64,000 nucleotides of DNA from Macrostomum lignano (taxonomy: Eukaryota): positions 1 to 64,000 of the forward strand of contig NIVC01000190.1 of assembly GCA_002269645.1 (NCBI GenBank). The letters run 5' to 3'. Each line of letters starts with the position of its first letter. Within the stretch, counting starts at the first letter, position 1. Of the stretch, positions 12,855 to 63,145 are shown piece by piece. A program made the translations under genes and the position numbers. The notes below the pieces were generated by a model. That model did no database searches. It was not told where the DNA came from and was given only the letters and a program-made list of their open reading frames with translations.

Positions 12855-13160
<306 letters not shown>

Positions 13161-21424: not shown

Positions 21425-34746
<13,322 letters not shown>

Positions 34747-36709: not shown

Positions 36710-36950
36710 ATGATGGATGCAAATGGCAATGGCAACGACATGGCAGATGCTTTAGGTACTCCATCAGCTTCAACATCATCATCAACTCCAATAGCTCAAG
36801 CTCGTACAGGCAAACTTCAAGGCCTGTTGAAGTCGCAGTGTCAAGACCCTGGTAGCGGAGGCAGCAGTGTCTCATCTCCAACGCCAACACAAAAAAAATC
36901 TGTGTCATTTCTTTCATCGTCCTTTGACAAGGGAATTCGCGTTATCGATG
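36710..36950 (+). CDS. PLCL: PLCL exon 1 (N-terminus with RVxF motif)
   Basis: MMDANG...[11 protein letters not shown]...; donor gtgagt. Confidence 0.78.
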
Positions 36951-39900
36951 GTGAGTAGAGCTTCGATATTTGACCAGTGTTCTCTGCTTATTTGAGTAGA
37001 TTATTATCGGGTAGACAGCTACTCTTCTAGATTAGGTCATCTGAGTAGTCTTGCTGGGTAGACAGCTACTCTTCTAGATTAGGTCATCTGAGTAGTCTTG
37101 CTGGGTAGAAAGCTGCTCTTATAGATTAGGTCATCTGAGTAGTCTTGCTGGGTAGACAGCTACTCTTCTAGATTAGGTCATCTGAGTATTCTTGCTGGGT
37201 AGAAAGCTGCTCTTCTAGATTAGGTCATCTGAGTAGTCTTGCTGGGTAGACAGCTACTCTTCTAGATTAGGTCATCTGAGTAGTCTTGCTGGGCAGACAG
37301 CTACTCTTCTAGATTAGGTCATCTGAGTAGTCTTGCTGGGTAGACAGCTACTCTTCTAGATTAGGTCATCTGAGTAGTCTTGCTGGGTAGACAGCTGCTC
37401 TTCTAGATTAGGTCATCTGAGTAGTCTTGCTGGGTAGATAGCTACTCTTCTAAATTAGGTCATCTGAGTAGTCTTGCTGGGTAGACAGCTACTCTTCTAG
37501 ATTAGGTCATCTGAGTAGTCTTGCTGGGTAGACAGCTACTCTTCTAGATTAGGTCATCTGAGTAGTCTTGCTGGGTAGACAGCTACTCTTCTAGATTAGG
37601 CATCTGAGTAGTCTTGCTGGGTAGACAGCTACTCTTCTAGATTAGGCATCTGAGTAGTCTTGCTGGGTAGACAGCTACTCTTCTAGATTAGGTCATCTGA
37701 GTAGTCTTGCTGGGTAGACAGCTGCGAGTATAAGCGATCGTTTTTTGAACTGACAGGGGAGACTCAAATCTAACGGAATTGAGCAAAGTCAATTTTTTGA
37801 AGAAAAAGAGAACTCAAGACTTGAAAGAAAATTTCTGCGGAATGGATGACCCTGAAAAGATATCAGGAAGGATGGCATAGCAACCGTAGATAAGATCAGC
37901 CCGGTCGGGAGAGTCTTTCGTTTTTTTCCTCCCATTTTTAGCCTTCGCCTTTCTTCCCGCGGCGTCCGCACTTTTATATGCGCGCGTTTTATTGACTCAG
38001 CCAACCGGGAAGTTCGTTGGCGCGGAAATCCCCATCTTGGCGAGATGAGGAAGGAGTCTGGGACACGGGGTAGAAGTCGATGAGGGGGTTTTAGGCGTGA
38101 CAGCTTTTTGAAACTCGAATTCGTTTTGGAGCGATTTTCTCAGGCAAATTTTTAAGATAAGATCTCCACCGAGCAAAGTGGGCTCTAAAGTTCAATAAAT
38201 TCCCGTTTTTATCTGTTCGCTGGAGTTCAGCTTTTGGAAACTTTTATGTAATTAACAGCTTACCTTTTACTTGCGCCATTACTCATTTACATATTCTCAC
38301 TCACTCACTGACTCACTCATTCACTTACTCACTCACTCACTGACTCACTCATTCACTCACTCATTCACTCATTCACTTACTCATTTACTCACTCATTCTC
38401 ACATACACATTCACTCACTCATTCATTCACTTACTCACTCACTCATTCATTCACTCACTCACTCACTTACTCATTTACTCATTTATTCACTAACTCACTC
38501 ACTCACTGAAAAAACTTTTTACTCATAAAGATGGTCCTGAGTTAACTTGACATAACGCAGTCGAGTTCGCTCATCCCCACAAAAGTACTTTAAAACATTG
38601 ATGGATAGAAGGGCAGACAGCTAAATAAATAGACTTGGCTGGCCCGGGGACAAAAATGATGATTTTTTAGTGCGGATAGCGGGGGCCGCGTCCGAGACGG
38701 AAGATTTGCAGCTTGAAGGCTCTGCCGCTAATCGATAATGTATTGTGATATTATAATGTAGGCAGTATAGCGATACGGCGGTTGGCTCCCGATGTTAATG
38801 CATACATCGAACGCTAGCCGCCTCCCACTCGCGGATATTGTGACAGCGGCTATCCCGAAAGACTTTGATTATCATTCTTGTCTGACAGGCTGAACCGAGT
38901 TTTTAGTAGTTATATGTGCGGATGTTGTATTGGGGTTTATGTGGGCATTATCGACCAGATATTGCTTCAGCATTAGCGCCGCGCCTTATCCCTTCATCAC
39001 TAATTCTTCATCACAATCCCTTCATCACTCTTCCTTCATCACAATCCCTTCATCACTATCCCCTCAACACTATCCCTTCATCACAATCCCTTTATCATAA
39101 AGTCTTCATCACAATCCCTTCATCACTCTCCCTTCATCACAATCCCTTCATTCATCATTATCCCTTCATCACAATCCCTTCATCACGGTCCCTTCTTCAC
39201 TATCCCTTCATCACTATCCCTTCATCACTATCCCTTCATCACTATCCCTTCATCACTATCCCTTCGTCACTCACTATCCCTTGATCACAATCCCTTGATC
39301 ATGATCCCTTAATCACGATCCTTTTATCACTATCCCTTCATTGTAGTCCTTCGTCCGGGCATGTGACACAGCACCCTGTCTTCGTACATTTATTTTGCTT
39401 TACCTAATTGCTAACAACTGTGTCCAGAATCTTATAAACCATAAACTAGCCGGTATACCGCGGGTCATAAAAGATGCTGTGTGTCGCCTTTTTTGCGAAA
39501 GAATACGAGTATTTTACTGTGCTGCCCCTTTTCCTTAATGCCATTAACCAGCGCCCGATTGCGTCAACTACATGCGCGACGGCACCGAATTGCTGAAGAT
39601 TCGGTCTAGCAGTCGACACTTTAAACGCTTCTTCTTTTTGGACACTGAGACCATGGAAATTCGGTGGCATCCGTCTTCTAAGAAGAGACAGAAAGCGAAA
39701 TGTGAGTTCTTTTAATTAAATCATTTTTGGGTACATTAAATTCAGCATCTGGTATCTCACACCCGCCCCACTCCGCACACCCATCCCACTCTGCACACTC
39801 ACCTTTCTCCGAACACCCACCCCACTCCGCACACCCATCCCACTTTGAGCACCCACACCACTCCGCACACCCACCCCACTCCGAACACCCACCAACTCCG

Positions 39901-42900: not shown

Positions 42901-44947
42901 TATGGGGATCTGGGCTTACAGTATGGGGATCCGGGTTTACAGTATGGGGATCTGGGCTTACAGTATGGGATCTGGGCTTACAGTATGGGGATCTGGTCTT
43001 ATAGTACGGGATCTGGGCTTACAGTATGGGATCTGGGCTTACAGTATGGGGATCTGGGCTTACAGTATGGGGATCCGGGTTTACAGTATGGGGATCTGGG
43101 CTTACAGTATGGGGATCTGGGCTTACAGTATGGGGATCTGGGCTTACAGTATCGGGAATGTGGATCTACATTACTCATATTGAGAATTTTGTCTCCCGTC
43201 ACGCAGTGAAGCATGCTGATTGTTCATTTTAAAGTACACAGCGCTCTATCAGTCTGGCCAACTTCAATTTATGTGGGCAGCAGCCATGAGAAATTAATTC
43301 GATACAATGCAAGCCAGTGCTGGCCGCCGGCCCCAAGTATGTAAGCAGAAACTAAAATCAAGTAGCGCTGGAATGCTCTCGCCGACACGAGAGAGCTGAG
43401 AGACAGGCGGGAGAGAGGGTAAGAGGCTCTAAAAGATGTAGGCAATTTGAGCTCACTCACGCGGAAGTGCTCAGCGTGTAGAGAGGCTGAGCTAGCACTG
43501 GCTTGCACTCGGTCAAGGACATCTCTAAAATAAAATCTGGAGTGCAAATTTGCCTTATGTGCATGTGGCATAAACTTGATATAAGTTAAAAATCCTTGGA
43601 TACCGATGGAAGCATTTTATAAGCTCGAAGCTTCACAAGCTCGAATATCCACAAGCTCGAATATCCACAAGCTCGAATATCCACAAGCTCGAATATTCAC
43701 CAGCTCGAGTCTTCACATGCTTTAATATTCACAAGCTCGAATATTCACAAGCTCGAATCTTCACAAGCTCAAATATTCACAAGCTCTAATATTCACAAAC
43801 TCGAATATTCACAAGCTCAAATCTTCACAAGCTCGAATAGTCACAAGCTCGAATCTTCACAAGCTCGAATACTCGTATTCACTAGCTTGAATGTTCACAA
43901 GCTCGAAAATTCACAAGCTCAAATCTTCACAAGCTCGAATCTTCACAAGCTCAAATCTTCACCATCTCGAGTATTCACCAGCTCGAATCTTCACAAGCTC
44001 GAATATTCACCAGCTCGAATCTTCACCAGCTCGAATATTCACCAGCTCGAATCTTTACCATCTCGAATCTTTACCATCTCGAATATTCACCATCTCGAAT
44101 CTTTACCATCTCGAATCTTTACCATCTCGAATCTTTACCATCTCGAATATTCACCAGCTCGAATCTTCACCATCTCGAATATTCACAAGCTCGAATCTTC
44201 ACAAGCTCGAATCTTCACCAGCTCGAATATTCACAAGCTCGAATCTTCACAAGCTCGAATCTTCACCAGCTCGAATATTGACAAGCTCGAATATTCACAA
44301 GCTCGAAACTCGAAGAGGTCATGGGAAACAGTTGGCACTCCCAGACTTTAGTTCAGGGTGTCCTTGACTCCGTCCACTCGCTTCCCAGTTTAATGTTTGT
44401 CTTTCTATGGCCTCCCCTAGCTCACGAGCCCCGCTTAAGTCTCTCACTCCATCTGAAGAAGTCTATAATTCATTTTTACTTTACCCTTGGTGTGTTAGCG
44501 TGTAGAAAGTAATAAATCATTGCTCTTCGCTGATTTTTCGCTAATATTTGCTTATTATTTTATAGATTCATATATCATTGCAAAGAGTAATGAATGGAGT
44601 TAATTAAAACAAAATGTTGGGTGTGTTAGAGGTGTATGAAATGTACTTTTGATTTCTAATATATGAGTATATATAGATCTCACCTTTTGTGCTCTTTCCC
44701 TCCTTTCCAGTGCCAATCGACCAGCTCAAGGAGGTTCGCCGCGGCCGCACGTCGGCCATCCTAAAGGACAGCGAAGTTGCCGCCGCCTACCCTGCAGACT
44801 GCGCTTTCACCGTCATCTACGGCGAGGACTTCCTGTCCATGGACCTTGTCGCCGTGTCCCTTGACGACGCTAACGTGTGGGTCACCGGCCTCACCTGCCT
44901 CATCAATGGCCGGCCTGGGCAGCTGTGTGCGTGACCGCGTTTTACTG

Positions 44948-45030
<83 letters not shown>

Positions 45031-45035
45031 GTGGG

Positions 45036-45066
<31 letters not shown>

Positions 45067-45359
45067 GTGGGTGTCTGTCTGTCTGTGTGGGTGTCTGTCT
45101 GTCTGTCTGTCTGTCTGTGTGGGTGTCTGTCTGTCTGTCTGTCTGTCTGTGTGGGTGTCTGTCTGTCTTAGTGTCTGTCTGTCTGTCTGTCTGTCTGTCT
45201 TAGTGTCTGTGTGGGTGTCTGTCTGTCTGTTTGTCTTAGTGTCTGTGTAGGTGTCTGTCTGTCTGTCTGTCTTAGTGTCTGTGTAGGTGTCTGTCTGTCT
45301 GTTTGTCTTAGTGTCTGTGTAGGTGTCTGTCTGTCTGTCTGTCTTAGTGTCTGTGTGGG

Positions 45360-45426
<67 letters not shown>

Positions 45427-48400
45427 GTGTCTGTCTGTCTGTGTTTTAGTGCCTGTCAGTGTCCATCCTAGTGTCTGTCTGTTTGTCAGTTAGTCATTAA
45501 TAAATTAGAATACGCAGCAAGTCGGTCACTAAAACTTGCTAACCGGTTTATTTGTACTTTTATTTTAGCAAGTGATACAATTGAGAAACGGCAACTCATG
45601 CGCGACAGGTGAGTCAACTTTGTCCGTATTTGCCAAGATGCAGTCCGCACTCATCACTTACCAAATATGGTAGTCATATTGACAGTAGACATTAAAAATT
45701 AGTTTACCAATAACATTGCTAGATGGCTTGAAGAAGTGTTCTCAGCCGCTTCACTGGACGAAGACGGATTTCTCGATGAGCAGGACGTCATCCAGCTGAT
45801 GAAGAAACTCAACAGCGGCGTCAACACCTCTAGGATTAAAAAGAAGTTGAAGGTGAGGGTAACGGTTCTATTCTTTTGCATCATTGCTTCCTTTGCCTTG
45901 GGATTTTTATCTCAATAAGATCCCATTGCATTCATCATATTCCATGGGATTTTTATCCCAATAAGATCCCATTGCATTCATCATATTCCATGGGATTTTT
46001 ATCCCAATAAGATCCCATTGCATTCATCATATTCCATGGGATTTTTATCCCAATAAGATCCCATTGCATTCATCATATTCCATGGGATTTTTATCCCAAT
46101 AAGATCCCATTGCATTATTTTAGTCCCAGGGGAATTTTATCCCAATAAGATCCCATTGCATTCAGCCTAGTTCATGGGGGTTTTTATCCCAATAAGATCC
46201 CAATTGCATTATTCTAGTCCCAGGGGAATTTTATCCCAATAAGATCCCATTGCATTCAGCCTAGTCACTGGTGATTTTTATCCTATTCAGCCCACCATAA
46301 AAATTTCTTCCTATTCGCCACAAATCCAGGAGGTGGACATCGCTAACGCAATCTCTTCCCGCGGTCGTTTGAGTAGCTCAGAGTTTGTTAACCTGTTTAA
46401 GGAGATTTCAACGCGGCCGGAGGTTTACTTCCTGCTTGTCAGGTAAGTCAAATGTCAGGCGTGCCAGATCTCTGGGGCGAAATGGGTCTTGAAGAATTGA
46501 CTTTCGGTTGGCTCGAGTTCCACTTAATTCTTAATTATTTCCGTTCGATTTTCGTACTTTTTGCAAATTTTTAGATAGCCAAAATCAGGACTGGGAAGTC
46601 AGATTGAAGCTAAATCCTGTCTCATCCTGTCTCATCTCCTCTTGTCTAATCTCATCCTGTATTATCCTGTCTTATCTCATCTCATCCTGTCTCACTGTCT
46701 CATCTCATCTTGTCTAATCTCATCCTGTCTCATCTCATCCTATCTAATCTCATCCTGGTTCATTACATCCTGTCTCATCTCATCCTGTTATACTGTCTTA
46801 TCTCATCTTGTCTAATCTCATCCTGTCTCACTGTCTCATCATATCCTGTCTCATCCTGTCTCATCTCATCCTGTCCCACTGTCTTATCTCATCTTGTCTC
46901 ATCTCATCCTGTCTCACTGTCTCATCTCATCCTGTCTCATCCTGTCTCATCTCATCCTGTCCCACTGTCTCATCTCATCCTGTCTTATCTCATCCTGTCT
47001 CATCTCTTCTTTGCTCATCCTGTCTCATCTCATCTAATCTCTCTCCTCTTGTTTCAAATTTACCAATTAGCCTTCATCAATCTCCAGTTAGCGACTACTC
47101 CTTCCCATTTATTCCAAATCAGTCCAGCCCTCAGTGTATGATAACTAATTGCTTTCCTAGAAAAATCCTGAGCCTTAAATTTCTGAAGAAAACGTGGAGC
47201 AGCAGAAAGGAGTGGCGAAGGGAGAGACAGAGGCTCGCGAGCAGCACGCCCTCTCCCCCCAGTCCAAATCAGTCATTTTTCCAGTTCAGCGACACGGTTA
47301 TTGCATGCCTGAGCATGTCCTGCCGTCTTGAAGAAGATTCTCCAGTTTTTTTTTCTTCTTTGGGCTCTCGCCTGCCCGCCTGATTCCCCCCCCCCCCGGC
47401 AGGAACTTGGAGGGAAATGGGCGCTGTCCTGGGGCTTGTACTATTTGTGAGTTTGGAGTGGCCTGTCTAATGGACCTGTTTGGATCTCTGACACCCCCAG
47501 ATCCCTCGGACACCCCAGATCCCTCGGACACCCCAGATCCGTCAGACACCCCAGATCCCTCAGACACCCCAGATCCCTCAGACACCCCAGATCCCTCAGA
47601 CATCCCAGATCCCTCAGACATCCCAGATCCCTCAGACACACAGATCCCTCAGACACACAGATCCCTCAGACACACAGATCCCTCGGACACCCCAGATCCC
47701 TCAGACACACAGATCCCTCGGACACTCAGATCCCTCGGACACCCCAGATCTCCCGGACACCCCAGATCCCTCAGACATCCCAGATCCCTCAGACATCCCA
47801 GATCCCTCGGACACCCCAGATCTCCCGGACACCACAGATCCCTCGGACACCCCAGATCCCTCGGACACCCCAGATCCCTCGGACACCCCAGATCCCTCGG
47901 ACACCCCAGATCCCTCGGACACCCCAGATCCCTCGGACACCCCAGATCCCTCGGACATCCCAGATCCCTCGGACACCCCAGATCCCTCGGACACCCCAGA
48001 TCCCTCAGACATCCCAGATCCCTCAGACACCCCAGATCTCCCGGACACCCCAGATCCCTCGGACACCCCAGATCAGATACTCCAGTAAAGATTGTTCTGA
48101 CCAAAGTTTAATCACCGCATTGATTGCATTGCCTTTTGAGTCGCACCTTAACTTGACTAATTTCACCAATGCGCAGATACTCATCAGATGGAGACTATTT
48201 GTCTACGGAAGATCTGCTCATGTTTCTCGAAGCCGAACAGGGGGTACGGTGCTCATAGCTTTTATTGATCTTTGTATGATCGACAGTTCTTAACTCGAGC
48301 TCGTGTCTTTATTTCAGAATTCGAAAGTTAGCAAAGAGAAGTGCTCGGAAATTATTAACCAGTTCGAGCCGTCTACGGAGGGTCGGGCTAAAGGGCAGCT

Positions 48401-51400
48401 GGGCATTGACGGTGGGTCTGCGTTTAATGGGATTTTGAGTAAACCAGTACATGTAAAAGATCCCTGATGGTTTGTCCTAGCACTTAATCCTGTGCAGTAT
48501 GTGACATTTCTAATACCATGTACGTTAGTGGCGTTGAAAACCTCAAATAATAAGCCCCGAATCCTAAATTCCAAAACCAGGATTCCAAATCCTAAATACC
48601 GAATCCTCAATCCCAAATCCTGAATCTCAAATCCCGAATATCAAATCTCGAATCCCGAATCCCAAATCCCAAATCTCGAATCTCGAATCCCAAATCCCGA
48701 ATCCCAAATCTCGAATCTCGAATCCCAAATCCCAAATCCCAAATCCCGAATCCCAAATCCCAAATCTCAAATCCCAAATCCCGAATCCCAAATCCCGAAT
48801 CCCAAATCCCGAATCCCAAATCCCGAATCCCAAATCATAAATCCCAAATCTCAAATCTCGAATCCCAAATCCTGAATCGCAAATCCCAAATCTCGAATCC
48901 CAAATCCTAAATCTCTAATCCCGAATCTCAAATCTCAAATTCCAAATCCCAAATATTAAATCCCGAATCTCAAATCCCAAATCCCGAATTTCATGAATAC
49001 CATATCCCTTATCCTATATCTTATATCCCGAAATCTATAACACATATCCCGAATCCTATATCCCAAATCCAAAATGGCTCAACATGACAACTATAAATTT
49101 TGATATCCCTCCAAAACCCTGATCCAGGATTCACCGCCTTTCTTCAATCGGAATTCTGCGATATTTTCGACCCTGAGCACCTGGCAGTGTGCCAGGACAT
49201 GGAACAGCCGCTAACGCACTACTTTATTAACTCGTCGCATAACACGTATGTAGAAATCCTGATTGGTTTCACTTTAGTCGGGGGGGCGGGGGGGGAGTTT
49301 TTTGCCCACCAAACGAGATTTTATCCTAACCTTGAAATTCAGCTACCTGCTTGAGGACCAATTAAAAGGGAAGTCCAGCGTTGAAGGCTACGAGAAAGCG
49401 TTGAAGTCGCAAGTTCGTTACATTGAGCGTGAGTTGGTAGATCTTGCTTGTGTTTCTAGTCAGTATATTAAATTTAAAACTTTATTTTGTTAGATTTACA
49501 ATCAGCCTCATTAATGATTTGATTCCAGTCGAAGTGTGGAACGGCCCCAATGATGAGCCGATCATATACCACGGCCACACCCTCACCAGCAAGATTGGCC
49601 TGCGGGATGTCCTGGATACCGTGAGGCAGTTCGCCTTCTACAAGACCGAGTGAGTGCTCTGGGGTATGGGATCAAAATGTGGGATTTTTTGGATGGGATC
49701 AAAGTGTGGGATTTTTTGGATGGGATCAAAGTGTGGGATCTTTTGGATGGAATCAAAGTGTGGGATTTCTATTGGGTATGGGATCGGGTGTGGGATTTCT
49801 ATTGGGTATGGGGTCGGGTGTGGGATTTCTATTGGGTATGGGGTCGGGTGTGGGATTTCTATTGGGTATGGGATCAGAGTGTGGGAATTCTATTGGGTAT
49901 GGGATCAGAGTGTGGGAATTCTATTGGGTATGGGGTCGGGTGTGGGATTTCTTTTGGGTATGGGATCAGAGTGTGGGAATTCTATTGGGTATGGGGTCGG
50001 GTGTGGGATTTCTATTGGGTATGGGATCAGAGTGTGGGATTTCTATTGGGTATGGGGTCGGGTGTGCGATTTCTAATGGAGGTGGGATCGGGGTGTAGGA
50101 TTTCTATTGGAGGTGGGATCGGGTTGTAGGATTTCTATTGGAGGTGGGATCGGGTTGTAGGATTTCTATTGGGTATGGGATCGGGTTGTAGGATTTCTAT
50201 TGGGTATGGGATCGGGTTGTAGGATTTCTATTGGGTATGGGATCGGGTTGTAGGATTTCTATTGGAGGTGGGATCGGGGTGTGGGATTTCTATTGGGTAT
50301 GGGATCGGGTTGTAGGATTTCTATTGGGTATGGGATCGGGTTGTAGGATTTCTATTGGAGGTGGGATCAGAGTGTAGGATTTCTATTGGGTATGGGGTCA
50401 GAGTGTGGGATTTCTATTGGGTATGGGATCGGGGTGTGGGATTTCTATTGGGTATGGGATCGGGGTGTGGGATTTCTATTGGGTATGGTATCAGAGTGTG
50501 GGATTTCTATTGAGATGTGATCAGATATGAGATTTATATTGGGGTGTGGTCAGGGTGTGGGATGTCTCATGGAGTTGATGTCAGGGTGTGGGATGTCTGT
50601 AGGGATGGGACCAGAATTCGGGATTTTAGAAACAGCTAGGAAGTCTCTAGGAACGACTTAAGCTTTTTATCTTCGAAATCGAACAAATTCTGAGAACTGC
50701 AATCAGCACAAATGAAACTGAATACATTTGATGAAGCTAATTAATTATCATTCTTTAAGCCGATTTGATTTCTCAGGATTTTATCCTGAAAAATTATAAT
50801 TATGTTAATTGCACCTGCTGACAGGACACTAACTGGGTCTAATTAATTTAATTGAAGTCCTGTCGTTAAGGTAGATGAAGAGACGAGCTCCTGCATGCGC
50901 TACGGGGTAATTAGCGGCAGGGTGCCTTGAGAGATGCCGAAAAATCTATTGCCAATATTTTAAAATTATTTTTTTATTGCTCTAAAAAGAAGTATTCGTA
51001 AAACACATTGGTAAATCTCTCATGATGAAAAAATATCCCAGAATGGGCAATCCGTCAGGATGCAGAAATTTCTCTTATGATGGGGAAATCCCTCATGTAA
51101 CAATTGTGTAAAATATAAAAGTTCCATAGGAAAACGGAACTCAAAATAGTGCAATCCCTTAGGATGGGCAATCCCTTAAAATATGAAATCCTTAGTTAAA
51201 GAAATCCTCAAAATGGGGAATTCCTGACGATCCTCAAATGGGAAATCATTTACGATGGAAAATCCATCTAGAGTGGAAATCTCTCAAGATGGGAAATCCC
51301 TCAAGATGGGAAATCCCTCAGGATGTGAAATCCCTCAAGATGGGAAATCCCTCAAGATGGGAAATCCCTCAAGATGGGAAATCCCTCAAGATGGGAAATC

Positions 51401-51982
51401 CCTAAAGATTTGAAATCTTTTAAGATGGGAAATCCCCCAGGATGCAAATCCATCTGAATGGGAAATCCTTCACGATGGGAAATCCTTCAAGATCAAGAAT
51501 CTCTATGGAGGGGAAATCCCTCAAGATGGGAATCCCCGAGAAGGGGAATTCCTCAAGATCCTCAAGATGGAACGCGTCTGGCACGCGCCACCTCAAACCT
51601 CCCGCAGCATGCCGCTAATCCTGAGCATCGAGAACCACTGCAGCCTGGCCCAGCAGTGCCGCATGGTGCAGCTCATTCGTTCCACCCTTGGCGACTGGCT
51701 GCTGGACCCCGGCTCTGCCAGCGAGTCGGACGTTCAACTGCTGTCGGATCCTCGGCTGTTGACGCCGTCTCGACTTCGCCGACGCATCCTGGTGAAGTGC
51801 AAGAAGCTGCCGCCTCCGCCAGAAGGTGGCGCTTCGGCTGGCTGCGAACGGCAGGTGGCCACCGTGCAGCAAAGCGCAGTCGCCTTCGGCTACGTCAGCG
51901 AAGAGGACGACAATGTGGATATTCAGCGCGATCGAAGTCCCAAGGCGTTTAAAAAGGCTGGAAATCAGTCCCAGCAGTCCCT

Positions 51983-52018
<36 letters not shown>

Positions 52019-53418
52019 GCCGCCGCCTCAGCAGCAGCAGTGCGGCAGGCGGATCAAGCTGAGCCAGGAGCTGTCAGATCTGGCAGCTCTGGGCTCCGAG
52101 CGGTTCGCGGATTTGGACGACTGCTGCTTCCATTTTTATAGTGAGTTGAAAAGTTCTGAAAAAAGAATTTTTTTCTCAACTAGATCCTGGGAAAAGTCCT
52201 TTTCACTTCCATGGAAGTCTTGAAAAATCCCAAAAGTCATTAATAAATCTTGGAAAATCCTCAGGAAATTCCATAAATTTCTAAGAAATCTCTAAAACCC
52301 CATGGAAATCCACCCCGGGGAAACCCCACGGTAATCCACCCCGGGGACCCCAAGGAAATCCACCTGGGGAAACCCGAAAAAATCCTCCCCGGGGAAACCC
52401 AAGAAAATCCACTCCGGAAGAACCCCAAGGAAACCCACCCCGGGGAAACCCTAAGAAAATCCACGTAGGAAATCTCAATAAAGTCCGCCTACGAAACCCC
52501 AAGGAAATCCACTTCGGGAAACCCCCAAGGAAATCCACCTCGGGAAACCTCAAGGAAATTCACCTCAGGGAACCCCAAAGAAATCCACTTCGGGAGGCCA
52601 AAAGGAAATCCACCTCAGGGAAACCTCAAGGAAATCCAACCCGGGGGAACCCCAAGAAAATCCAAATTGCAGAGCTCGGAAAATCCAACAAAAATTACTC
52701 CTGTCCTCATTCCCAGAATCCGACTCGGCGCAGGCGGCCTCCCGTCATCAGCCTCATCACCAGCAGCAGCACCAGCTGCTCCATCAGCAGGTTTGGTCAA
52801 TCAGCGAGTCGGCCGCATTCCGTCTGGCCCAGTCGGACATGGACGGCCTGGTGGAGTACAGCCGGCGCTGCCTGGTGCAAGTGCAGCCCAACGCCATCCG
52901 GGTGGACTCCAGCAACTACAACCCTCAGGACATGTGGAGCTGCGGCTGTCAGCTGGTCTGCCTCAACCATCAGACTCCCGGCCTCATGACCGATTTAAAC
53001 CGGGGCCAGTTTTCTAAGAACGGCTCCTGCGGCTTCGTGCTGAAGCCGGGCGCTATGCGCCAGACTTTCGCCTTCCTCGCCCAGCGCGGCGGAGGCGGCT
53101 CGGACTTGGCGCCGCACAGCCTCCATATTCGCGTCATCAGCGGCTCGCAGCTGCCAAAGCCGCGCGGCTCCGTTGCTAAGGGAGACGTCACCGACCCCTG
53201 CGTTGTTGTGGAAGTGTTCGGCCTGCCCGCTGACTGTTCTGAAGAGCGGACGAAAACGGTGCATGGCAACGGCTATAATCCGGTATTCGATGAGTGCTTT
53301 GAGTTCCGGGTGAGTCTGCCTGAGCTGGCCCTGCTGCGGCTCGTTGTGCTGGACGATGACGCAATCGGTGACGACTTTATTGGCCAGTTCACGATTCCGT
53401 TCGACTGCATCCAGACTG
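36710..53418 (+). CDS. PLCL: Phospholipase C-like protein (PLCL/PRIP family): PH, EF-hands, X-Y catalytic boxes, C2; 13 exons, 3' end not in window
   Basis: Phase-consistent model: 36710-36950, 39552-39701, 44711-44926, 45569-45608, 45723-45852, 46330-46442, 48177-48243, 48318-48411, 49128-49245, 49343-49428, 49529-49649, 51608-52140, 52717-53418. PRIP-type features: KKSVSF (KTVSF PP1 site), [21 protein letters not shown]...[29 protein letters not shown]2 [15 protein letters not shown]. Confidence 0.9.
37008..37724. repeat. 47-bp intronic minisatellite
   Basis: actcttctag at 37021 and 37068. Confidence 0.96.
38283..38506. repeat. (TCAC/TCAT)n microsatellite
   Basis: Direct reading. Confidence 0.9.
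38990..39340. repeat. 14-bp repeat (TCACTATCCCTTCA)
   Basis: tcactatccc at 39211 and 39225. Confidence 0.88.
39552..39701 (+). CDS. PLCL: PLCL exon 2 (PH domain)
   Basis: [49 protein letters not shown]. Confidence 0.92.
39765..40180. repeat. C-rich 18-20-bp repeat (CACCCCACTCCGMACAC)
   Basis: Direct reading. Confidence 0.9.
40655..40805. repeat. Short array containing TAGATTAGCAATCCATTCT
   Basis: About 4 units; the core is the reverse complement of the repeat at 63750-63995. Confidence 0.8.
41245..41745. repeat. Degenerate TCTAGAGGGACA repeat
   Basis: Many TCTAGA sites at roughly 12-bp spacing. Confidence 0.8.
42220..43152. repeat. 20-21-bp minisatellite (GGGATCTGGGCTTACAGTATG)
   Basis: Direct reading. 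Confidence 0.96.
43625..44308. repeat. 16-bp minisatellite (CTCGAATMTTCACAAG)
   Basis: tcacaagctc at 43745 and 43761. Confidence 0.95.
44711..44926 (+). CDS. PLCL: PLCL exon 3 (PH domain)
   Basis: [14 protein letters not shown]...[36 protein letters not shown]. Confidence 0.92.
44950..45470. repeat. (TCTG)n compound microsatellite
   Basis: Carries GTGGGT and TTAGTG interruptions. Confidence 0.95.
45569..45608 (+). CDS. PLCL: PLCL exon 4
   Basis: [13 protein letters not shown]; ttttag acceptor, gtgagt donor. Confidence 0.8.
45723..45852 (+). CDS. PLCL: PLCL exon 5 (EF-hand)
   Basis: [43 protein letters not shown]. Confidence 0.9.
45905..46260. repeat. 46-bp intronic minisatellite
   Basis: ataag at 45961 and 46007; contains the GGGAT-TTTT-ATCCC inverted repeat. 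Confidence 0.93.
46330..46442 (+). CDS. PLCL: PLCL exon 6 (EF-hand)
   Basis: [38 protein letters not shown]. Confidence 0.9.
46615..47035. repeat. TCTCATCCTG-based 10/15-bp repeat
   Basis: Direct reading. Confidence 0.88.
47490..48072. repeat. 18-bp minisatellite (CCCAGATCCCTCGGACAC)
   Basis: ggacac at 47881 and 47899. Confidence 0.95.
48177..48243 (+). CDS. PLCL: PLCL exon 7
   Basis: [22 protein letters not shown]. Confidence 0.9.
48318..48411 (+). CDS. PLCL: PLCL exon 8
   Basis: [32 protein letters not shown]. Confidence 0.9.
48560..49065. repeat. AATCCC/AATCTC-based repeat
   Basis: Direct reading. Confidence 0.9.
49128..49245 (+). CDS. PLCL: PLCL exon 9 (X box start)
   Basis: [39 protein letters not shown]. 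Confidence 0.93.
49343..49428 (+). CDS. PLCL: PLCL exon 10 (X box)
   Basis: [29 protein letters not shown]. Confidence 0.92.
49529..49649 (+). CDS. PLCL: PLCL exon 11 (X box)
   Basis: [39 protein letters not shown]. Confidence 0.92.
49662..50600. repeat. About 30-bp G/T-rich minisatellite (GGGATTTCTATTGGGTATGGGRTCGGGTGT)
   Basis: attgggtatg at 49801 and 49831. Confidence 0.93.
51275..51570. repeat. 17-bp repeat (GGGAAATCCCTCAAGAT)
   Basis: Direct reading. Confidence 0.88.
51608..52140 (+). CDS. PLCL: PLCL exon 12 (X box end, X-Y linker, Y box start)
   Basis: [12 protein letters not shown]...[12 protein letters not shown]...[11 protein letters not shown]. Confidence 0.92.
52300..52655. repeat. 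About 24-bp repeat (AAGGAAATCCACCTCGGGAAACCC)
   Basis: Degenerate tandem units. Confidence 0.8.
52717..53418 (+). CDS. PLCL: PLCL exon 13 (Y box and C2 domain)
   Basis: VWSISES...[29 protein letters not shown]...[10 protein letters not shown]...[14 protein letters not shown]...[15 protein letters not shown]. Confidence 0.93.
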
Positions 53419-53514
53419 GTGAGTGGGGCGGGCGAAAGTTAAGCAGAGTCAGTTGCGGTTAGTACGCCTGTTTTATCGTCAAGTACCTGGGTTTGATTAC
53501 TGAGAACTAGACAA

Positions 53515-54265
53515 TAGTCTCAGGTGAGATTCTATACCTGTACATGACAGCCTCTGGTGAGATTCTATCCCTGTAGATGGCAGTCTCAGGTGAAATTTTA
53601 TCTCTGTAGATGATAGTCACAGGTGAGATTCTATCCCTGTAGATGGTAGTCTCAGGCGAGATTAAATCCTGTAGATGACTGTCTCATGTGAGATTTTATC
53701 CCTGTAGATAGCAGTCTCAGGTGAGATTCTATCCCTGTAGATGGCAGTCTCAGGTGAGATTCTATCCCTGTAGATGGTAGTCTCAGGCGAGATTAAATCC
53801 TGTAGATGACAGTCTCATGTGAGATTCTATCCCTGTAGATGACAGTCTCAGGTGAGATTCTATCTCTGTAGATGACAGTGTCATGTGAGATTCAATGCCT
53901 GTAGATGGCAGTCTCAGGTGAGATTCTATCCATGTAAATCACAGTCTCAGGTGAGATTAAATCCTGTAGATGACAGTCCTGTAGATGACAGTCCCAAGTG
54001 AGATTCTATCCCTGTAGATAGCAGTCTCATGTGAGATTCAATACCTGTACATGACAGTCTCATGTGAGATTCAATGCCTGTACATGACAGTCTCATGTGA
54101 GATTCAATGCCTGTACATGACAGTCTCATGTGAGATTCTGTCCCTGTAGATGGCAGTCTCATGTGAGATTCTGTCCCTGTAGATGGCAGTCTCATGTGAG
54201 ATTCTGTCCCTGTAGACGACAGTCCCAAGTGAGATTAAATTTTGTAGATGACAGTCTCAGGTTAG
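53515..54265. repeat. 33-bp minisatellite (GTGAGATTCTATCCCTGTAGATGGCAGTCTCAG)
   Basis: cctgtag at 53701 and 53734. Confidence 0.95.
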
Positions 54266-54519
54266 ATTCTACGAATATATGAATGTTTGGGGCGAGTGCA
54301 ATGCATGCGTAGCAAATCTGTGCTGTGGTTTCAACAGCTGATCAATGCATGCAGCACGAGCGCTGCTTGGGTTGGATTGCTGTCTGCCGCAGTCCGTCAC
54401 TCTCTCTCCCTGCTCAGCTTTCAAGTCACGCGCACGCAAGTGTTGGACACAGCTTGGCAAATTGGAACTGGAATTAATGACCTGGATTGAGCTATGCTTG
54501 CTGTGTTGTATCGTATTGC

Positions 54520-54533
54520 TGTCTGTCTGTCTG

Positions 54534-54620
<87 letters not shown>

Positions 54621-54627
54621 ATCTCTG

Positions 54628-54687
<60 letters not shown>

Positions 54688-54691
54688 GTAG

Positions 54692-54728
<37 letters not shown>

Positions 54729-54811
54729 TAGTGTCTGTCTGTCTGTCTGTCTTAGTGTCTGTCTGTCTGTCTGTCTGTCTGTCTTAGTGTCTGTCTGTCT
54801 GTCTGTCTTAG

Positions 54812-54856
<45 letters not shown>

Positions 54857-54859
54857 TAG

Positions 54860-54896
<37 letters not shown>

Positions 54897-54963
54897 TAGT
54901 GTCTGTCTGTCTGTCTGTCTGTCTGTCTTAGTGTCTGTCTGTCTGTCTGTCTGTCTGTCTTAG

Positions 54964-55000
<37 letters not shown>

Positions 55001-55003
55001 TAG

Positions 55004-55064
<61 letters not shown>

Positions 55065-55131
55065 ATCTCTGTGTCTGTCTGTCTGTCTGTCTGTCTTAGT
55101 GTCTGTCTGTCTTAGTGTCTGTCTGTCTTAG

Positions 55132-55168
<37 letters not shown>

Positions 55169-55203
55169 TAGTGTCTGTCTGTCTGTCTGTCTGTCTGTCT
55201 TAG

Positions 55204-55278
<75 letters not shown>

Positions 55279-55281
55279 CTG

Positions 55282-55341
<60 letters not shown>

Positions 55342-55345
55342 GTAG

Positions 55346-55382
<37 letters not shown>

Positions 55383-55475
55383 TAGTGTCTGTCTGTCTTA
55401 GTGTCTGTCTGTCTGTCTGTCTGTCTGTCTTAGTGTCTGTCTGTCTCTGTCTGTCTGTCTGTCTGTCTGTCTTAG

Positions 55476-55512
<37 letters not shown>

Positions 55513-55515
55513 TAG

Positions 55516-55558
<43 letters not shown>
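54520..55558. repeat. (TCTG)n compound microsatellite, left flank of the TIR element
   Basis: Carries TTAGTG interruptions. Confidence 0.96.
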
Positions 55559-55561
55559 TCT

Positions 55562-58500
55562 ACTGTCTGTGTGTTTACGTGGACTTTTTGGAAGTTCAGT
55601 AGCCTCGTTAGCTGGACCACCCGGTGTAGGTAGACCACTTAGGTGGACCACCAAATAATTTTGTCTCTGGTGGGGTTAAGACGTTGATGAGGATCTCACA
55701 TTAATGTCAGGCGGGTCAAGAAAGGCTTAAGCAATTTTGGGATGTCTAGCATGGTTTTTTCCAAAGTTATTTGCATTTCAGTTTAGCTGGACCTCCAGCC
55801 TGGTCTACCTAAACCGAGCGAGTCTGGTCCACGTAAACCGAAAAATTTTAGAAAATTTTTCGAAAATCGTCTGTTTGTGTCTGTTTGTGTCTGTTTGTGT
55901 CTGTTTGTGTATAGCAGTTATTAAGCATAGATTCAATGCAAAACTGATTTTTTTACAGATCATTACCTTACGAACAAAGGGCTATGTTAGCATCATATTA
56001 TGACCGCTACTGGCTTTAAAACAATATGCGTTCAGTTCTTTGACATTCAAGTAGGTACGCAGGTTAATTTAAAATTCTGAAACCTCGTATGCGAAATGAA
56101 TTTGATTAGCTCAGTTCCAGCAATTTCGGTATCGTACTCTGAATCTGAGAAATCCAATTCGCGAACCAGATCAAACGATAAAGACTCCGAGACAAGAAAG
56201 ATATTTAAGTGAAGCCTAAATAGTATTCTTCAATGACTTCTCAAGAACTCCCAGTGGTCCTTGATAGCCACACTGTGTAAATGCGAATTTCTGAGGCTCT
56301 ACCATTACACAAGAAGAAAATAGCAACTTCATGAATTAAGTGCTTGCCAACAATTCTATACTAAACACTATGGGATATCCTGTTCTATCCTCCTCCAATG
56401 TTGGAAGAAGAAGATCCTAAGCTGCAGCCTTTCAAGTGCAAAGTTGAAGATGCAATTTACCTATTTGAAAAGGACAATTCATACATGTACATGCAAAAGA
56501 TTTGATCAAGAGGACGCAATTAAGAAGGGCCTTTTAGCTAGCGATCGGGTCTCTGACTCTCTAGCAAAAGGTCGACTTGATTGTGGTCCCAGTAAAACTA
56601 AGAACGCATTAACAGTCAGCCTAACACTCACTGTCTGTTTGGTCCACGTAAACACATGTGCAGGAGTATAGGGTTGGAACAGACAGACAGACAGACCTCC
56701 TTTTCTATAATTGGCTGGTTAACACTTAGGAGGATAGATCCACCCCAACAATGGGACCGACCGCAGCCAATAGGAAACCCGCAAGCGTTCTGAAGGTAAG
56801 ACAGTGGAGAGAGGGATATATAATGTCTAAGCGGGTGGTCCACGTAAACCATGGCGTAGTTAGACCAGGCACAGACATTTTAAAAGAAAGTACTTTTAAT
56901 CCATACTATACATCTCTAAAGGATTGCAATTGTATAAATTAGAACGGTTTTTTTATACTTATTAGGTCTAATGTTAATCCTTACTCCAAGTTTCATCCAT
57001 ATATAAATTTATTGTGCCAAAAACTGTAATCTACAACCAAGATATGATGACCCGCAAAAAAGGACGCCAAGCCTAAAATAAAACTAAAAAAACACCGTCG
57101 CAAAAAGCCACTGCGAAATCGAAGAAGCCGCATCGCATCGCCTGGTGAAAATCATCAGTCTGCTCGCAAATCCGTCGACACCGAGTCCAGAAAAGTGAGT
57201 TTCGTTTGATGATCTCAAAGTAGCTAGCTGCAGGGCCTGCAACTCAATTGCTGTAGAGAAGCTGGTCCACCTAACCTACAGACACAACTCGAACAGATTT
57301 CTCTGTCTGTTTAGGGCTCTGGCTCTCAGAGCCGCCGAGAAAGTTTAGTACCGAGAATGCTTCAGTTTGTTAGAATGCAATCAGAACATATTCCTAGAAA
57401 GTGAGCTAGTCCAGCATCAAGGCAGAACATCTGGATGCGTAACGAGAGGCTCTCGGAGATTCCTGGCTCAGATTATCGCCTAGAAGTGCTGTGGAGTAGC
57501 TGGTCCACCTAACCTACAGACACAACTCGAACAGATTTCTCTGTCTGTTTAGGGCTCTGGCTCTCAGAGCCGCCGAGAAAGTTTAGTACCGAGAATGCTT
57601 CAGTTTGTTAGAATGCAATCAGAACATATTCCTAGAAAGTGAGCTAGTCCAGCATCAAGGCAGAACATCTGGATGCGTAACGAGAGGCTCTCGGAGATTC
57701 CTGGCTCAGATTATCGCCTAGAAGTGCTGTGGAGTAGCTGGTCCACCTAACCTACAGACACAACTCGAACAGATTTCTCTGTCTGTTTAGGCCCTGGCTC
57801 TCAGAGCCGCCGAGAAAGTTTAGTGCCGAGAATGCTTCAGTTTGTTAGAATGCAATCAGAACAGATTCCTAGAAAGTGAGCTAGTCCAGCATCAAGGCAG
57901 AACATCTGGATGCGTAACGAGAGGCTCTCGGAGATTCCTGGCTCAGATTATCGCCTAGAAGTGCTGTGGAGTAGCTGGTCCACCTAACCTACAGACACAA
58001 CTCGAACAGATTTCTCTGTCTGTTTAGGCCCTGGCTCTCAGAGCCGCCGAGAAAGTTTAGTGCCGAGAATGCTTCAGTTTGTTAGAATGCAATCAGAACA
58101 TATTCCTAGAAAGTGAGCTAGTCCAGCATCAAGGCAGAACATCTGGATGTGTAACGAGAGGCTCTCGGAGATTCCTGGCTCAGATTATCGCCTAGAAGTG
58201 CTGTGGAGTAGCTGGTCCACCTAACCTACAGACACAACTCGAACAGATTTCTCTGTCTGTTTAGGCCCTGGCTCTCAGAGCCGCCGAGAAAGTTTAGTGC
58301 CGAGAATGCTTCAGTTTGTTAGAATGCAATCAGAACAGATTCCTAGAAAGTGAGCTAGTCCAGCATCAAGGCAGAACATCTGGATGTGTAACGAGAGGCT
58401 CTCGGAGACTCCTGGCTCAGATTATCGCCTAGAAGTGCTGTGGAGTAGCTGGTCAACCTAACCTACAGACACAACTCAAACAGATTTCTCTGTCTGTTTA

Positions 58501-62976: not shown

Positions 62977-62984
62977 CGTAAGAG

Positions 62985-63024
62985 TGTCTGTCTGTCTGTC
63001 TGTCTTAGTGTCTGTCTGTCTTAG

Positions 63025-63065
<41 letters not shown>

Positions 63066-63068
63066 TAG

Positions 63069-63101
<33 letters not shown>

Positions 63102-63104
63102 TAG

Positions 63105-63145
<41 letters not shown>

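What the first reader, a model, noticed from the sequence alone, without database searches (positions are those of the whole stretch)
49128..52890. PRIP/PLCL ortholog with a reciprocal active-site pattern: both catalytic His kept, inositol-binding Arg and Tyr lost
Seen, with PLC-delta1 numbering by manual alignment: H311/N312 (SSHNTY), E341 (YIEL), H356 (YHGHT, codon 49570-49572), E390 (SIENH), K438/K440 (VKCKK) and S522 (WSISE) are intact. D343 is E (49531-49533), and RIYP has become QVQP, so R549 is Q (52878-52880) and Y551 is Q (52884-52886). Known: vertebrate PRIPs are inactive and lack the H356 equivalent but keep RIYP; R549 confers preference for PIP2/PIP and Y551 stacks on the inositol ring. 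Inference: either an independent route to a pseudo-enzyme, or an enzyme with shifted substrate specificity (for example PI rather than PIP2). Tyr to Gln needs two base changes, so sequencing error is unlikely.
Basis: partly seen in the sequence, partly recalled or inferred. Interest (0 to 1): 0.75.

Follow-up and report, generated by a model that had tools for sequence, protein, structure and literature searches.

The report
Flatworm PLC-like gene with eroded substrate pocket
This is the Macrostomum lignano (flatworm) member of the PLC-like/PRIP family: it keeps both catalytic histidines but has lost two residues that hold the inositol-lipid headgroup, one more case of the active-site decay that recurs across this family, so it is real but fairly ordinary.

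Summary
Window 36710-53418 (+) holds 13 GT-AG exons of a PH-EF-X-Y-C2 protein. The window end cuts off the last two exons. Against rat PLC-delta1 numbering, H311, N312, E341, H356, E390, K438, K440 and S522 are kept. D343 is E, R549 is Q (CAA, 52878-80) and Y551 is Q (CAG, 52884-86).

A second M. lignano copy (P0364, contig NIVC01001816.1) encodes the same QVQP. It uses a synonymous CAG at 549, and dN/dS between the copies is 0.12. So this is neither a sequencing error nor a pseudogene.

PLCL/PRIP membership holds: the PH/EF region is 40-44% identical to PLCL against 23-30% to delta, the KKSVSF motif is present, and the PRIP-type C-terminal extension is present in the sister copy.

The "reciprocal pattern" is less special than claimed. 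Mollusc, annelid, echinoderm, tunicate and cnidarian PLCLs keep both histidines too. Loss of R549/Y551 with both histidines kept recurs in ticks, a mite and amphioxus. Trematodes share D343E, lack R549/Y551, and have also lost N312 and H356.

Most likely this protein no longer cleaves PIP2 and works as a PRIP-type scaffold. A PI-preferring residual enzyme is not excluded.

The parts
36710..36950 (+). Exon 1: start codon, low-complexity N-terminus, and the KKSVSF motif (36893-36910) that aligns with the KKTVSF motif of vertebrate, nematode, tunicate and cnidarian PLCLs
   Evidence: identical exon in L001 10001-10241
39552..39701 (+). Exon 2: N-terminal half of the PH domain. It has the PRIP-type basic residues [15 protein letters not shown] (equivalents of PLC-delta1 K30, K32, R40)
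44711..44926 (+). Exon 3: C-terminal half of the PH domain ([19 protein letters not shown]...ANVWVTGL)
45569..45608 (+). Exon 4: 40-nt mini-exon ([13 protein letters not shown]) in the PH-EF linker. The public model P0364 includes it; model P0001 skips it by using a donor 4 nt downstream in exon 3
45723..45852 (+). Exon 5: EF-hand region
46330..46442 (+). Exon 6: EF-hand region
48177..48243 (+). Exon 7: EF-hand-like region
48318..48411 (+). Exon 8: EF-hand-like region, up to LGID(G)
49128..49245 (+). Exon 9: start of the X box, SSHNT (H311 49238-40, N312 49241-43)
49343..49428 (+). Exon 10: X box, R338 (49416-18) and E341 (49425-27)
49529..49649 (+). Exon 11: X box, D343->E (49531-33) and H356 in IIYHGHT (49570-72)
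51608..52140 (+). Exon 12: end of the X box (E390 51630-32; K438 51795-97; K440 51801-03) and the X-Y linker with an acidic patch and a polyQ/polyP run (51966-52040)
52717..53418 (+). Exon 13: Y box (S522 52797-99; R549->Q 52878-80; Y551->Q 52884-86; W555->I 52896-98) and most of the C2 domain. It ends in phase 1 after ...FDCIQT. The two final exons (last C2 strands plus the PRIP-type C-terminal extension) lie beyond the window end

Best explanation
The locus is an intact, selectively maintained copy of the Macrostomum lignano PLCL/PRIP-family gene (PH-EF-X-Y-C2 plus a C-terminal helical extension). Its TIM-barrel catalytic domain keeps the general acid/base histidines and three of the four Ca2+ ligands. 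It has lost the arginine that binds the 4-phosphate (R549Q) and the tyrosine that stacks on the inositol ring (Y551Q), and one Ca2+ ligand is changed (D343E). The most likely consequence is that it no longer hydrolyses PI(4,5)P2 at a physiologically useful rate. It would then act, like vertebrate PRIP, through its non-catalytic parts: an IP3/PIP2-binding PH domain, the N-terminal KKSVSF phosphatase-docking-type motif, the C2 domain and the C-terminal extension. Unlike vertebrate PRIP, its X-Y barrel probably does not hold PIP2 either. This is one of many independent, lineage-specific erosions of the active site in a family whose conserved role does not depend on catalysis. Shown here: the sequence states, family membership, purifying selection and the recurrence of erosion. 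Inferred: loss of activity and the scaffold function.
For: Residue states were read against the rat PLC-delta1 chain. K438, K440, S522 and R549 bind the 4'/5' phosphates and Y551 packs on the inositol ring (PMC12195575). H311, E341, D343, H356, E390, K440, S522, R549 and Y551 are listed as key catalytic residues (PMC11174929). Family membership rests on Pfam PH_12, EF-hand_like, PI-PLC-X, PI-PLC-Y and C2. The N-terminal 362 aa are 40-44% identical (240-263 bits) to PLCLs against 23-30% (86-133 bits) to PLC-delta. The PH signature and KKSVSF motif are PRIP-type. The 97%-identical copy P0364 carries the PLCL C-terminal extension. The gene is functional: 13 GT-AG exons, an open frame, and dN/dS 0.116 against copy L001 with no amino-acid change in X, Y or C2. 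The AF2 model of P0364 has pLDDT above 90 across the core and TM 0.88-0.91 to rat PLC-delta1. Catalysis is dispensable in this family. Vertebrate PLCL2 has H356T and PLCL1 has H356N+E390G. C. elegans PLL-1 has H311R/N312K/H356N/E390S/K438V. Leech, hookworm, amphioxus, ticks, a mite and insects each have different hits. PLL-1 is presumed inactive in PMC2266627. In the same phylum, all trematode orthologs share D343E, lack R549/Y551, and have gone on to lose N312 and H356. The window protein differs at 23 of 103 delta-invariant X/Y positions. That is above molluscs and annelid (5-11) and echinoderms (15), and at or above known-inactive vertebrate PLCL2 (18-19).
Against: No activity was measured. 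All residues that carry out the chemistry (H311, H356, E341, E390, N312, R338) are intact. The X-box motifs [27 protein letters not shown] and ILSIENHC are identical to those of molluscs with complete active sites, which could reflect continuing selection for catalysis. From memory, not found in the library: Wang et al. 1996 JBC reported that non-basic residues at 549 abolish PIP2 hydrolysis but not PI hydrolysis in PLC-delta1. K438, K440 and S522 remain. Flatworms evolve fast, so 23/103 changes may be background. Known-inactive PLCL2 also keeps well-conserved X-box motifs, so motif conservation argues neither way.
Confidence: 0.6

Rival explanations
1. It is still an enzyme with shifted specificity. 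It would be a Ca2+-dependent PLC that prefers PI (or another inositol lipid lacking the 4-phosphate) over PI(4,5)P2, because only headgroup-recognition residues changed while the catalytic machinery is preserved.
For: H311, N312, R338, E341, H356 and E390 are all intact, and D343E is conservative. X-box motifs are identical to fully intact mollusc PLCLs. There is strong purifying selection with no amino-acid change in X/Y between the two copies. The core fold is confidently predicted. From memory: R549 mutants of PLC-delta1 retain PI hydrolysis (Wang et al. 1996); Ellis et al. 1998 name R549, K438 and S522 as determinants of polyphosphoinositide preference.
Against: Y551, which contacts the inositol ring itself (PMC12195575), is also lost, and that should weaken binding of any inositol lipid, PI included. 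The combination with a changed Ca2+ ligand is untested. Relatives in the same phylum went on to lose H356 and N312. At least eight other lineages of the family lost catalytic residues, so selection for catalysis is weak in this family. Purifying selection on X/Y is equally seen in known-inactive vertebrate PLCL2.
Confidence: 0.25
2. The pattern is an artefact: a sequencing or assembly error, or a decaying pseudogene copy in a duplicated genome.
For: The window contains no stop codon or final exons for this gene. Two UniProt models of the gene (P0001, P0020) are riddled with frameshifts. M. lignano carries near-identical duplicated loci.
Against: The frame is open through 13 canonical exons. 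An independent contig encodes the same residues with a synonymous codon difference at Q549. dN/dS is 0.116, with 21.5 synonymous against 8.5 non-synonymous differences. The missing 3' exons are explained by a 7.4-kb intronic insertion that pushes them about 1.15 kb past the window end. The frameshifts belong to the older models, not to the window.
Confidence: 0.03
3. It is not a PLCL at all but a divergent PLC-delta (or another class) of flatworms, so comparison with PRIP is misplaced.
For: The catalytic core is only slightly more similar to PLCLs (44-47%) than to PLC-delta4 (about 41%). My neighbour-joining trees lack a proper outgroup and place the gene on a long branch next to nematodes.
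Against: The N-terminal PH/EF region is far closer to PLCLs than to delta. The PH signature and KK[ST]VSF motif are PLCL-specific. The sister copy has the PLCL C-terminal extension with the conserved FAWN[IV]RVL.GQADLL motif. All best hits are PLCL-type. All delta sequences fall on the far side of a split from WIN plus vertebrate PLCLs in 200/200 bootstraps.
Confidence: 0.03

Closest known systems
Vertebrate PRIP-1/PLCL1 and PRIP-2/PLCL2 (phospholipase C-related catalytically inactive proteins)
   Same: Same family and architecture: PH-EF-X-Y-C2 plus a C-terminal extension. Shared PRIP-type PH basic residues and the N-terminal KK[TS]VSF motif. Non-canonical active site.
   Different: Vertebrate PRIPs lose the catalytic H356 (T or N; PLCL1 also E390G) but keep R549, Y551, K438, K440 and S522, and their X-Y domain still binds PIP2 (PMC6726632). 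The Macrostomum protein keeps H356 and E390 but loses R549 and Y551 and changes D343 to E.
Trematode PLCL orthologs (Schistosoma, Fasciola, Paragonimus, Opisthorchis and others)
   Same: Same phylum. They share the flatworm motif RYIE(L/I/M/V)E(V/I) with D343E, and R549/Y551 are replaced (Q/K/E and C/L/I/V). Schistosomes also have Q at 549.
   Different: Trematodes have additionally lost N312 (K), H356 (R) and S522, and changed ENH to EC(Y/F). A monogenean ortholog still has RVYP, so the Macrostomum loss of R549/Y551 is probably independent of the trematode loss.
Tick, mite and amphioxus PLCLs
   Same: The same combination: both catalytic histidines kept, R549 and Y551 replaced (H/S in Ornithodoros and Ixodes, Q/I in Oppia, E/H in Branchiostoma).
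   Different: Most of these also carry hits to Ca2+/catalytic ligands (E341K in Ornithodoros and Oppia but not seen in the Ixodes model; N312D, D343V, E390D and K438M in amphioxus). The Macrostomum protein has only the conservative D343E.
Mollusc, annelid, echinoderm, tunicate and cnidarian PLCL-like proteins
   Same: Closest overall sequences (44-51% identity), with the same architecture and C-terminal extension.
   Different: They keep the full PLC-delta1 catalytic set, apart from conservative K438R in Ciona and E341D in the annelid Ridgeia, so they are likely active enzymes even though several (not all) carry the automatic name 'inactive phospholipase C-like protein'.
Rat PLC-delta1 (PDB 1DJX/1QAS)
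   Same: Same fold (TM 0.88-0.91 for the AF2 model of the sister copy). Identical H311, N312, E341, H356, E390, K438, K440 and S522.
   Different: Different PH/EF type, no C-terminal extension. D343, R549 and Y551 are intact in delta1.

Membership tests
PLCL/PRIP (phospholipase C-like) family | Domain order PH - EF-hands - X - Y - C2 | tested here: met
   Pfam PH_12 5.8e-11, EF-hand_like 4e-15, PI-PLC-X 1.4e-52, PI-PLC-Y 5.9e-30, C2 2.8e-15 on the spliced product
PLCL/PRIP (phospholipase C-like) family | PH/EF region of PLCL type rather than PLC-delta type | tested here: met
   Residues 1-362 are 40-44% identical (240-263 bits) to vertebrate and nematode PLCLs against 23-30% (86-133 bits) to delta1/3/4. 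The PH motif K-I-R-x3-R-x3-R-F-F matches PLCLs, not delta's K-V-K-S-x-S-W
PLCL/PRIP (phospholipase C-like) family | N-terminal KK[TS]VSF motif (the PP1-docking region of PRIP-1; its role is from memory of Yoshimura 2001 and Terunuma 2004) | tested here: met
   KKSVSF at 36893-36910 aligns with KKTVSF/RKTVSF/SKSVSF of vertebrate, nematode, tunicate and cnidarian PLCLs. Binding itself is not testable here
PLCL/PRIP (phospholipase C-like) family | Long C-terminal extension after C2 with the conserved FAWN[IV]RVL.GQADLL region | tested here: inconclusive
   Not in the window. It is present in the 97%-identical copy P0364/L001, exons at L001 29564-30211 and 30484-30774. Collinearity places these exons about 1.15 kb beyond the window end
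PLCL/PRIP (phospholipase C-like) family | Groups with PLCLs, not PLC-delta, in a tree | tested here: met
   NJ trees: a split with all delta on one side and WIN plus vertebrate PLCLs on the other in 200/200 bootstraps. Placement within PLCLs is poorly resolved because of a long branch. No ML tree and no outgroup
PLCL/PRIP (phospholipase C-like) family | Replacement of catalytic H356 (the change that defines vertebrate PRIP as inactive) | tested here: not met
   H356 is CAC His (49570-72). This feature defines the vertebrate subfamilies only; most invertebrate PLCLs also keep it
PLCL/PRIP (phospholipase C-like) family | No PLC activity | not testable with these tools
   Needs an enzyme assay
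Active eukaryotic PI(4,5)P2-specific PLC (EC 3.1.4.11) | General acid/base pair H311 and H356 | tested here: met
   Both His
Active eukaryotic PI(4,5)P2-specific PLC (EC 3.1.4.11) | Ca2+ ligands N312, E341, D343, E390 | tested here: inconclusive
   N, E and E are kept; D343 is E (GAA 49531-33). This is conservative but otherwise seen only in flatworm PLCLs and one nematode
Active eukaryotic PI(4,5)P2-specific PLC (EC 3.1.4.11) | 4-/5-phosphate ligands K438, K440, S522, R549 | tested here: not met
   K, K and S are kept; R549 is Q
Active eukaryotic PI(4,5)P2-specific PLC (EC 3.1.4.11) | Aromatic residue stacking on the inositol ring (Y551) | tested here: not met
   Q (CAG 52884-86)
Active eukaryotic PI(4,5)P2-specific PLC (EC 3.1.4.11) | Hydrophobic ridge L320, F360, W555 | tested here: met
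   L, L and I: hydrophobic character kept, as in other PLCLs (L/M at 360, M at 555)

The most novel reading that the evidence does not exclude
The Macrostomum PLCL is a working phospholipase C whose natural R549Q/Y551Q/D343E pocket redirects it from PI(4,5)P2 to PI or another inositol lipid. On this reading, the PLCL family in many invertebrates (molluscs, annelids, echinoderms, cnidarians) is an unrecognised seventh class of active PLCs, from which pseudo-enzymes arose many times by different routes.
Probability: 0.2. Interest if true: 0.6.

Novelty: new member of a known kind. Interest (0 to 1): 0.3.

Why it matters
On its own the locus adds one more lineage-specific variant to a family already known for catalytically dead members. 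The wider picture from the comparison is more useful. PLCL proteins of many invertebrate phyla keep a complete PLC active site. At least nine lineages (vertebrate PLCL1 and PLCL2, amphioxus, nematodes, insects/crustaceans, Acari, leech, trematodes, Macrostomum) have damaged it at different residues. That makes PLCL a natural series for studying how an enzyme turns into a scaffold. It also warns that the automatic name 'inactive phospholipase C-like protein' is probably wrong for many invertebrates. Macrostomum is the mildest case, with only headgroup contacts lost, and M. lignano is a transgenic laboratory model (PMC5730564), so it is a convenient place to test whether R549/Y551 alone decide activity or specificity.

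Tried and rejected
1. I searched the window downstream of 53418 for the last C2 strands and the C-terminal extension, using a family HMM on six-frame fragments, a regex and a listing of open frames. Nothing was found. This was later explained by a 7.4-kb insertion in the intron and the window end.

2. My first exon model used a donor 4 nt too far downstream in exon 3 and missed a 40-nt mini-exon. I corrected it after comparison with P0364.

3. I tried to estimate selection from in-frame versus out-of-frame identity to the frameshifted UniProt models. It was too noisy and I replaced it with a direct codon comparison to L001.

I therefore searched with the exon-13 translation and modelled the structure on the public copy P0364 rather than the window protein.

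5. The second homolog search, with the N-terminal 363 aa, returned only 12 hits and no new flatworms.

6. Literature searches for the PLC-delta1 R549/Y551 mutagenesis papers (Wang 1996, Ellis 1998) found nothing in the library. What I say about them is from memory and marked as such.

7. A search for papers on PLCL pseudo-enzyme evolution found none.

8. Flatworm monophyly of the PLCLs was not recovered by NJ (10% bootstrap). The shared RYIELEV motif is the only evidence for a common flatworm state.

9. The AF2 model gives fold confidence only. No coordinates were available for docking.
Full report
WHAT IS THERE

The window is eukaryotic DNA with short GC-rich exons (56% GC, GC3 69%) and long introns (45% GC) full of tandem arrays. 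On the + strand I reconstructed 13 exons with canonical GT-AG borders and one open frame of 870 codons. The exons are 36710-36950, 39552-39701, 44711-44926, 45569-45608, 45723-45852, 46330-46442, 48177-48243, 48318-48411, 49128-49245, 49343-49428, 49529-49649, 51608-52140 and 52717-53418. Pfam reads the product as PH_12, EF-hand_like, PI-PLC-X (1.4e-52), PI-PLC-Y (5.9e-30) and C2.

OBSERVATION CHECK

A phmmer alignment to the rat PLC-delta1 chain of PDB 1DJG/1DJX (chain index + 132 = residue number; the index places H311 in SSHNTY) fixes the numbering.

- Kept: H311 (CAT 49238-40), N312, R338, E341 (GAG 49425-27), H356 (CAC 49570-72), E390 (51630-32), K438 and K440 (51795-97, 51801-03), S522 (52797-99).
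- Changed: D343 to E (GAA 49531-33), R549 to Q (CAA 52878-80), Y551 to Q (CAG 52884-86). The ridge residue W555 is I and F360 is L.

Every statement of fact in the finding is therefore correct.

ORGANISM, AND WHY THIS IS NEITHER AN ERROR NOR A PSEUDOGENE

The best protein hits are Macrostomum lignano models. Two UniProt models (P0001, P0020) are frameshifted versions of the same gene. NCBI BOX15_Mlig023826g1 (P0364, 1179 aa) is a clean full-length model 97% identical to the window product. Its contig (GCA_002269645.1 NIVC01001816.1, locus L001) is collinear with the window.

Codon-by-codon comparison of the two copies gives 21.5 synonymous and 8.5 non-synonymous differences, with dS 0.037, dN 0.0043 and dN/dS 0.116. 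All amino-acid changes lie in the disordered N-terminus, the PH domain (one change) or the X-Y linker. None lies in the X box, the Y box or C2. The codon for Q549 itself differs synonymously, CAA in the window and CAG in L001. Both copies and P0001 encode [16 protein letters not shown].

The gene lacks its end in the window because intron 13 carries a 7.4-kb insertion (55581-62985, including a 237-bp satellite) that is absent from L001. Collinearity resumes at 62985-63994 = L001 27402-28418. That puts the next exon (L001 29564) about 1.15 kb beyond the window end.

FAMILY

The catalytic core alone is only a little closer to PLCLs (44-47%) than to PLC-delta4 (about 41%), but the rest is decisive.

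- The N-terminal 362 residues are 40-44% identical (240-263 bits) to vertebrate and nematode PLCLs and 23-30% (86-133 bits) to delta1/3/4.
- The PH domain has the PLCL pattern [13 protein letters not shown] rather than delta's K-V-K-S-x-S-W.
- Exon 1 carries KKSVSF, aligned with the KKTVSF of PRIPs and present even in a cnidarian PLCL.
- The sister copy has the family's C-terminal extension with FAWNVRVLRGQADLL.
- In NJ trees all delta sequences fall on the other side of a split from this protein plus the vertebrate PLCLs in 200/200 bootstraps. The position inside PLCLs is unresolved because the branch is long.
- An AF2 model of P0364 (mean pLDDT 78, above 90 over PH, EF, X, Y and C2) matches rat PLC-delta1 with target-normalised TM 0.88-0.91, and its PH domain matches the delta1 PH-IP3 complex.

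HOW UNUSUAL IS THE PATTERN?

I read the same columns in 120 close hits, in 145 representatives of 50%-identity clusters found with the exon-13 translation (named), and in flatworm and other PLCLs found with a Paragonimus query. I checked them in a multiple alignment.

(a) Vertebrate PLCL2 has H356T. PLCL1 has H356N plus E390G.

(b) Mollusc, echinoderm and cnidarian PLCLs keep all eleven residues. The annelid Ridgeia (E341D) and the tunicate Ciona (K438R) differ only by a conservative change. Keeping both histidines is therefore the common invertebrate state.

(c) Other lineages are damaged, each in its own way:
- Insects, crustacean and millipede: E341K, with or without Y551F.
- Ticks: R549H/Y551S; Ornithodoros also E341K and K438Q.
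- The mite Oppia: E341K/S522Q/R549Q/Y551I.
- Amphioxus: N312D/D343V/E390D/K438M/R549E/Y551H.
- The leech Helobdella: E341K/H356R/E390V/K438L/K440Q/R549L/Y551F.
- C. elegans PLL-1: H311R/N312K/H356N/E390S/K438V/Y551F.
- Hookworms: many changes.

So 'both His kept, R549 and Y551 gone' occurs at least four times.

(d) All trematode orthologs read SSHKT (N312K), RYIE.E. (D343E, the same motif as Macrostomum's RYIELEV) and VVRR (H356R), with Q/K/E at 549 and C/L/I/V at 551. A monogenean ortholog groups with the trematodes in 100% of bootstraps and still has RVYP and S522. D343E thus looks like an old flatworm change. R549/Y551 were probably lost separately in Macrostomum and in trematodes.

(e) Outside the PLCL family R549 and Y551 are almost invariant.

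MECHANISM

K438, K440, S522 and R549 bind the 4'/5' phosphates of the headgroup, and Y551 packs against the inositol ring (PMC12195575). D343 is among the residues listed as key for catalysis (PMC11174929). From memory, it is a Ca2+ ligand. Also from memory: alanine replacement of most of these residues lowers activity by three or more orders of magnitude (Ellis et al. 1998), and a non-basic residue at 549 abolishes PIP2 hydrolysis but not PI hydrolysis (Wang et al. 1996).

A pocket with Q549, Q551 and E343 should therefore bind PI(4,5)P2 poorly. The family tolerates loss of catalysis again and again, and the nearest flatworm relatives went on to lose H356 and N312. I therefore think the most likely state is a protein that no longer works as a PIP2 phospholipase (confidence about 0.6). 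It would be kept, as dN/dS 0.12 shows, for PRIP-type roles of its PH domain, KKSVSF motif, C2 and C-terminal helices.

In vertebrate PRIP the X-Y domain still binds PIP2 (PMC6726632). Here that property is probably lost as well, and this is the one respect in which 'reciprocal' is a fair word.

The count of changes at 103 delta-invariant X/Y positions is 23 in Macrostomum. It is 5-11 in molluscs and the annelid, 15 in echinoderms, 18-19 in PLCL2 and 30 in PLCL1. This agrees with relaxed constraint but is confounded by fast flatworm evolution.

The main rival, at about 0.25, is a still-active enzyme with shifted preference, for example for PI. It is supported by the untouched catalytic residues and by X-box motifs identical to those of intact mollusc PLCLs. 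Artefact or pseudogene, and mis-assignment to the family, are each about 0.03.

NOVELTY AND SCORE

The protein is in public databases as an uncharacterised model. Its family and the existence of inactive members are well known (PMC2266627, PMC6726632). I found no paper on active-site erosion across invertebrate PLCLs. I file the locus as a new member of a known kind, with interest 0.3.

The comparative picture is the more interesting by-product: intact active sites in many phyla, and at least nine independent erosions by different routes. So is the likely mislabelling of intact invertebrate proteins as 'inactive'.

Noticed in passing
window 37009-55574 (introns of the PLCL gene): Almost every intron carries its own tandem array: 47-bp x15 at 37009-37723, 21-bp x45 at 42220-43157, 16-bp at 43621-44307, (TGTC)n at 44948-45442, 18-bp at 47486-48074, 31-bp x31 at 49662-50614, 17-bp at 51232-51559, 26-bp at 52295-52664, 33-bp at 53516-54271, and (CTGT)n x266 at 54519-55574.
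   Followed up: partly
window 55581-62985: A 7.4-kb stretch in the last visible intron has no counterpart in the paralogous or allelic contig L001. It contains a 237/238-bp satellite (about 19 copies, 96-98% identical, 57249-61907) interrupted by 68-71-bp sub-repeats. No terminal inverted repeats were found.
   Followed up: partly
window 21425-28641, minus strand: Open frames of another gene on the opposite strand. One (21425-22171) has a LIM zinc-finger domain (Pfam E 6.3e-07). The others are polyQ-rich with no family match.
   Followed up: partly
window 44923-44930 and 45569-45608: A 40-nt mini-exon in the PH-EF linker is included in public model P0364. Model P0001 skips it by using a donor 4 nt further downstream in exon 3, which also keeps the frame. 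This may be alternative splicing.
   Followed up: partly
window 26969-30182 vs L001 24-3238; window 38296-55154 vs L001 11566-27714: Identity between the window and the second M. lignano contig is uneven: 99.3% upstream of the gene but 88-95% in the gene's introns and 98.9% in its exons. This could reflect gene conversion, a mosaic assembly, or alleles versus duplicated chromosome copies.
   Followed up: no
window 11791-13235: Very long trinucleotide runs give poly-Ser/Val/Leu/Tyr open frames of more than 200 codons on both strands.
   Followed up: no
proteins P0003-P0010, P0014, P0019, P0297, P0300, P0388 (related sequences): Mollusc, echinoderm and cnidarian proteins keep every PLC-delta1 catalytic and substrate-binding residue, although several (Mytilus, the sea urchins, Asterias, Anneissia, Acropora) are named 'inactive phospholipase C-like protein' by automatic annotation. 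The name is probably wrong for them.
   Followed up: partly
proteins P0001 and P0020 (UniProt A0A1I8F7Y7 and a second M. lignano entry): These public models of the same gene contain many stretches translated out of frame relative to the window, presumably from indel errors in an older assembly. They would mislead any residue-level analysis.
   Followed up: yes
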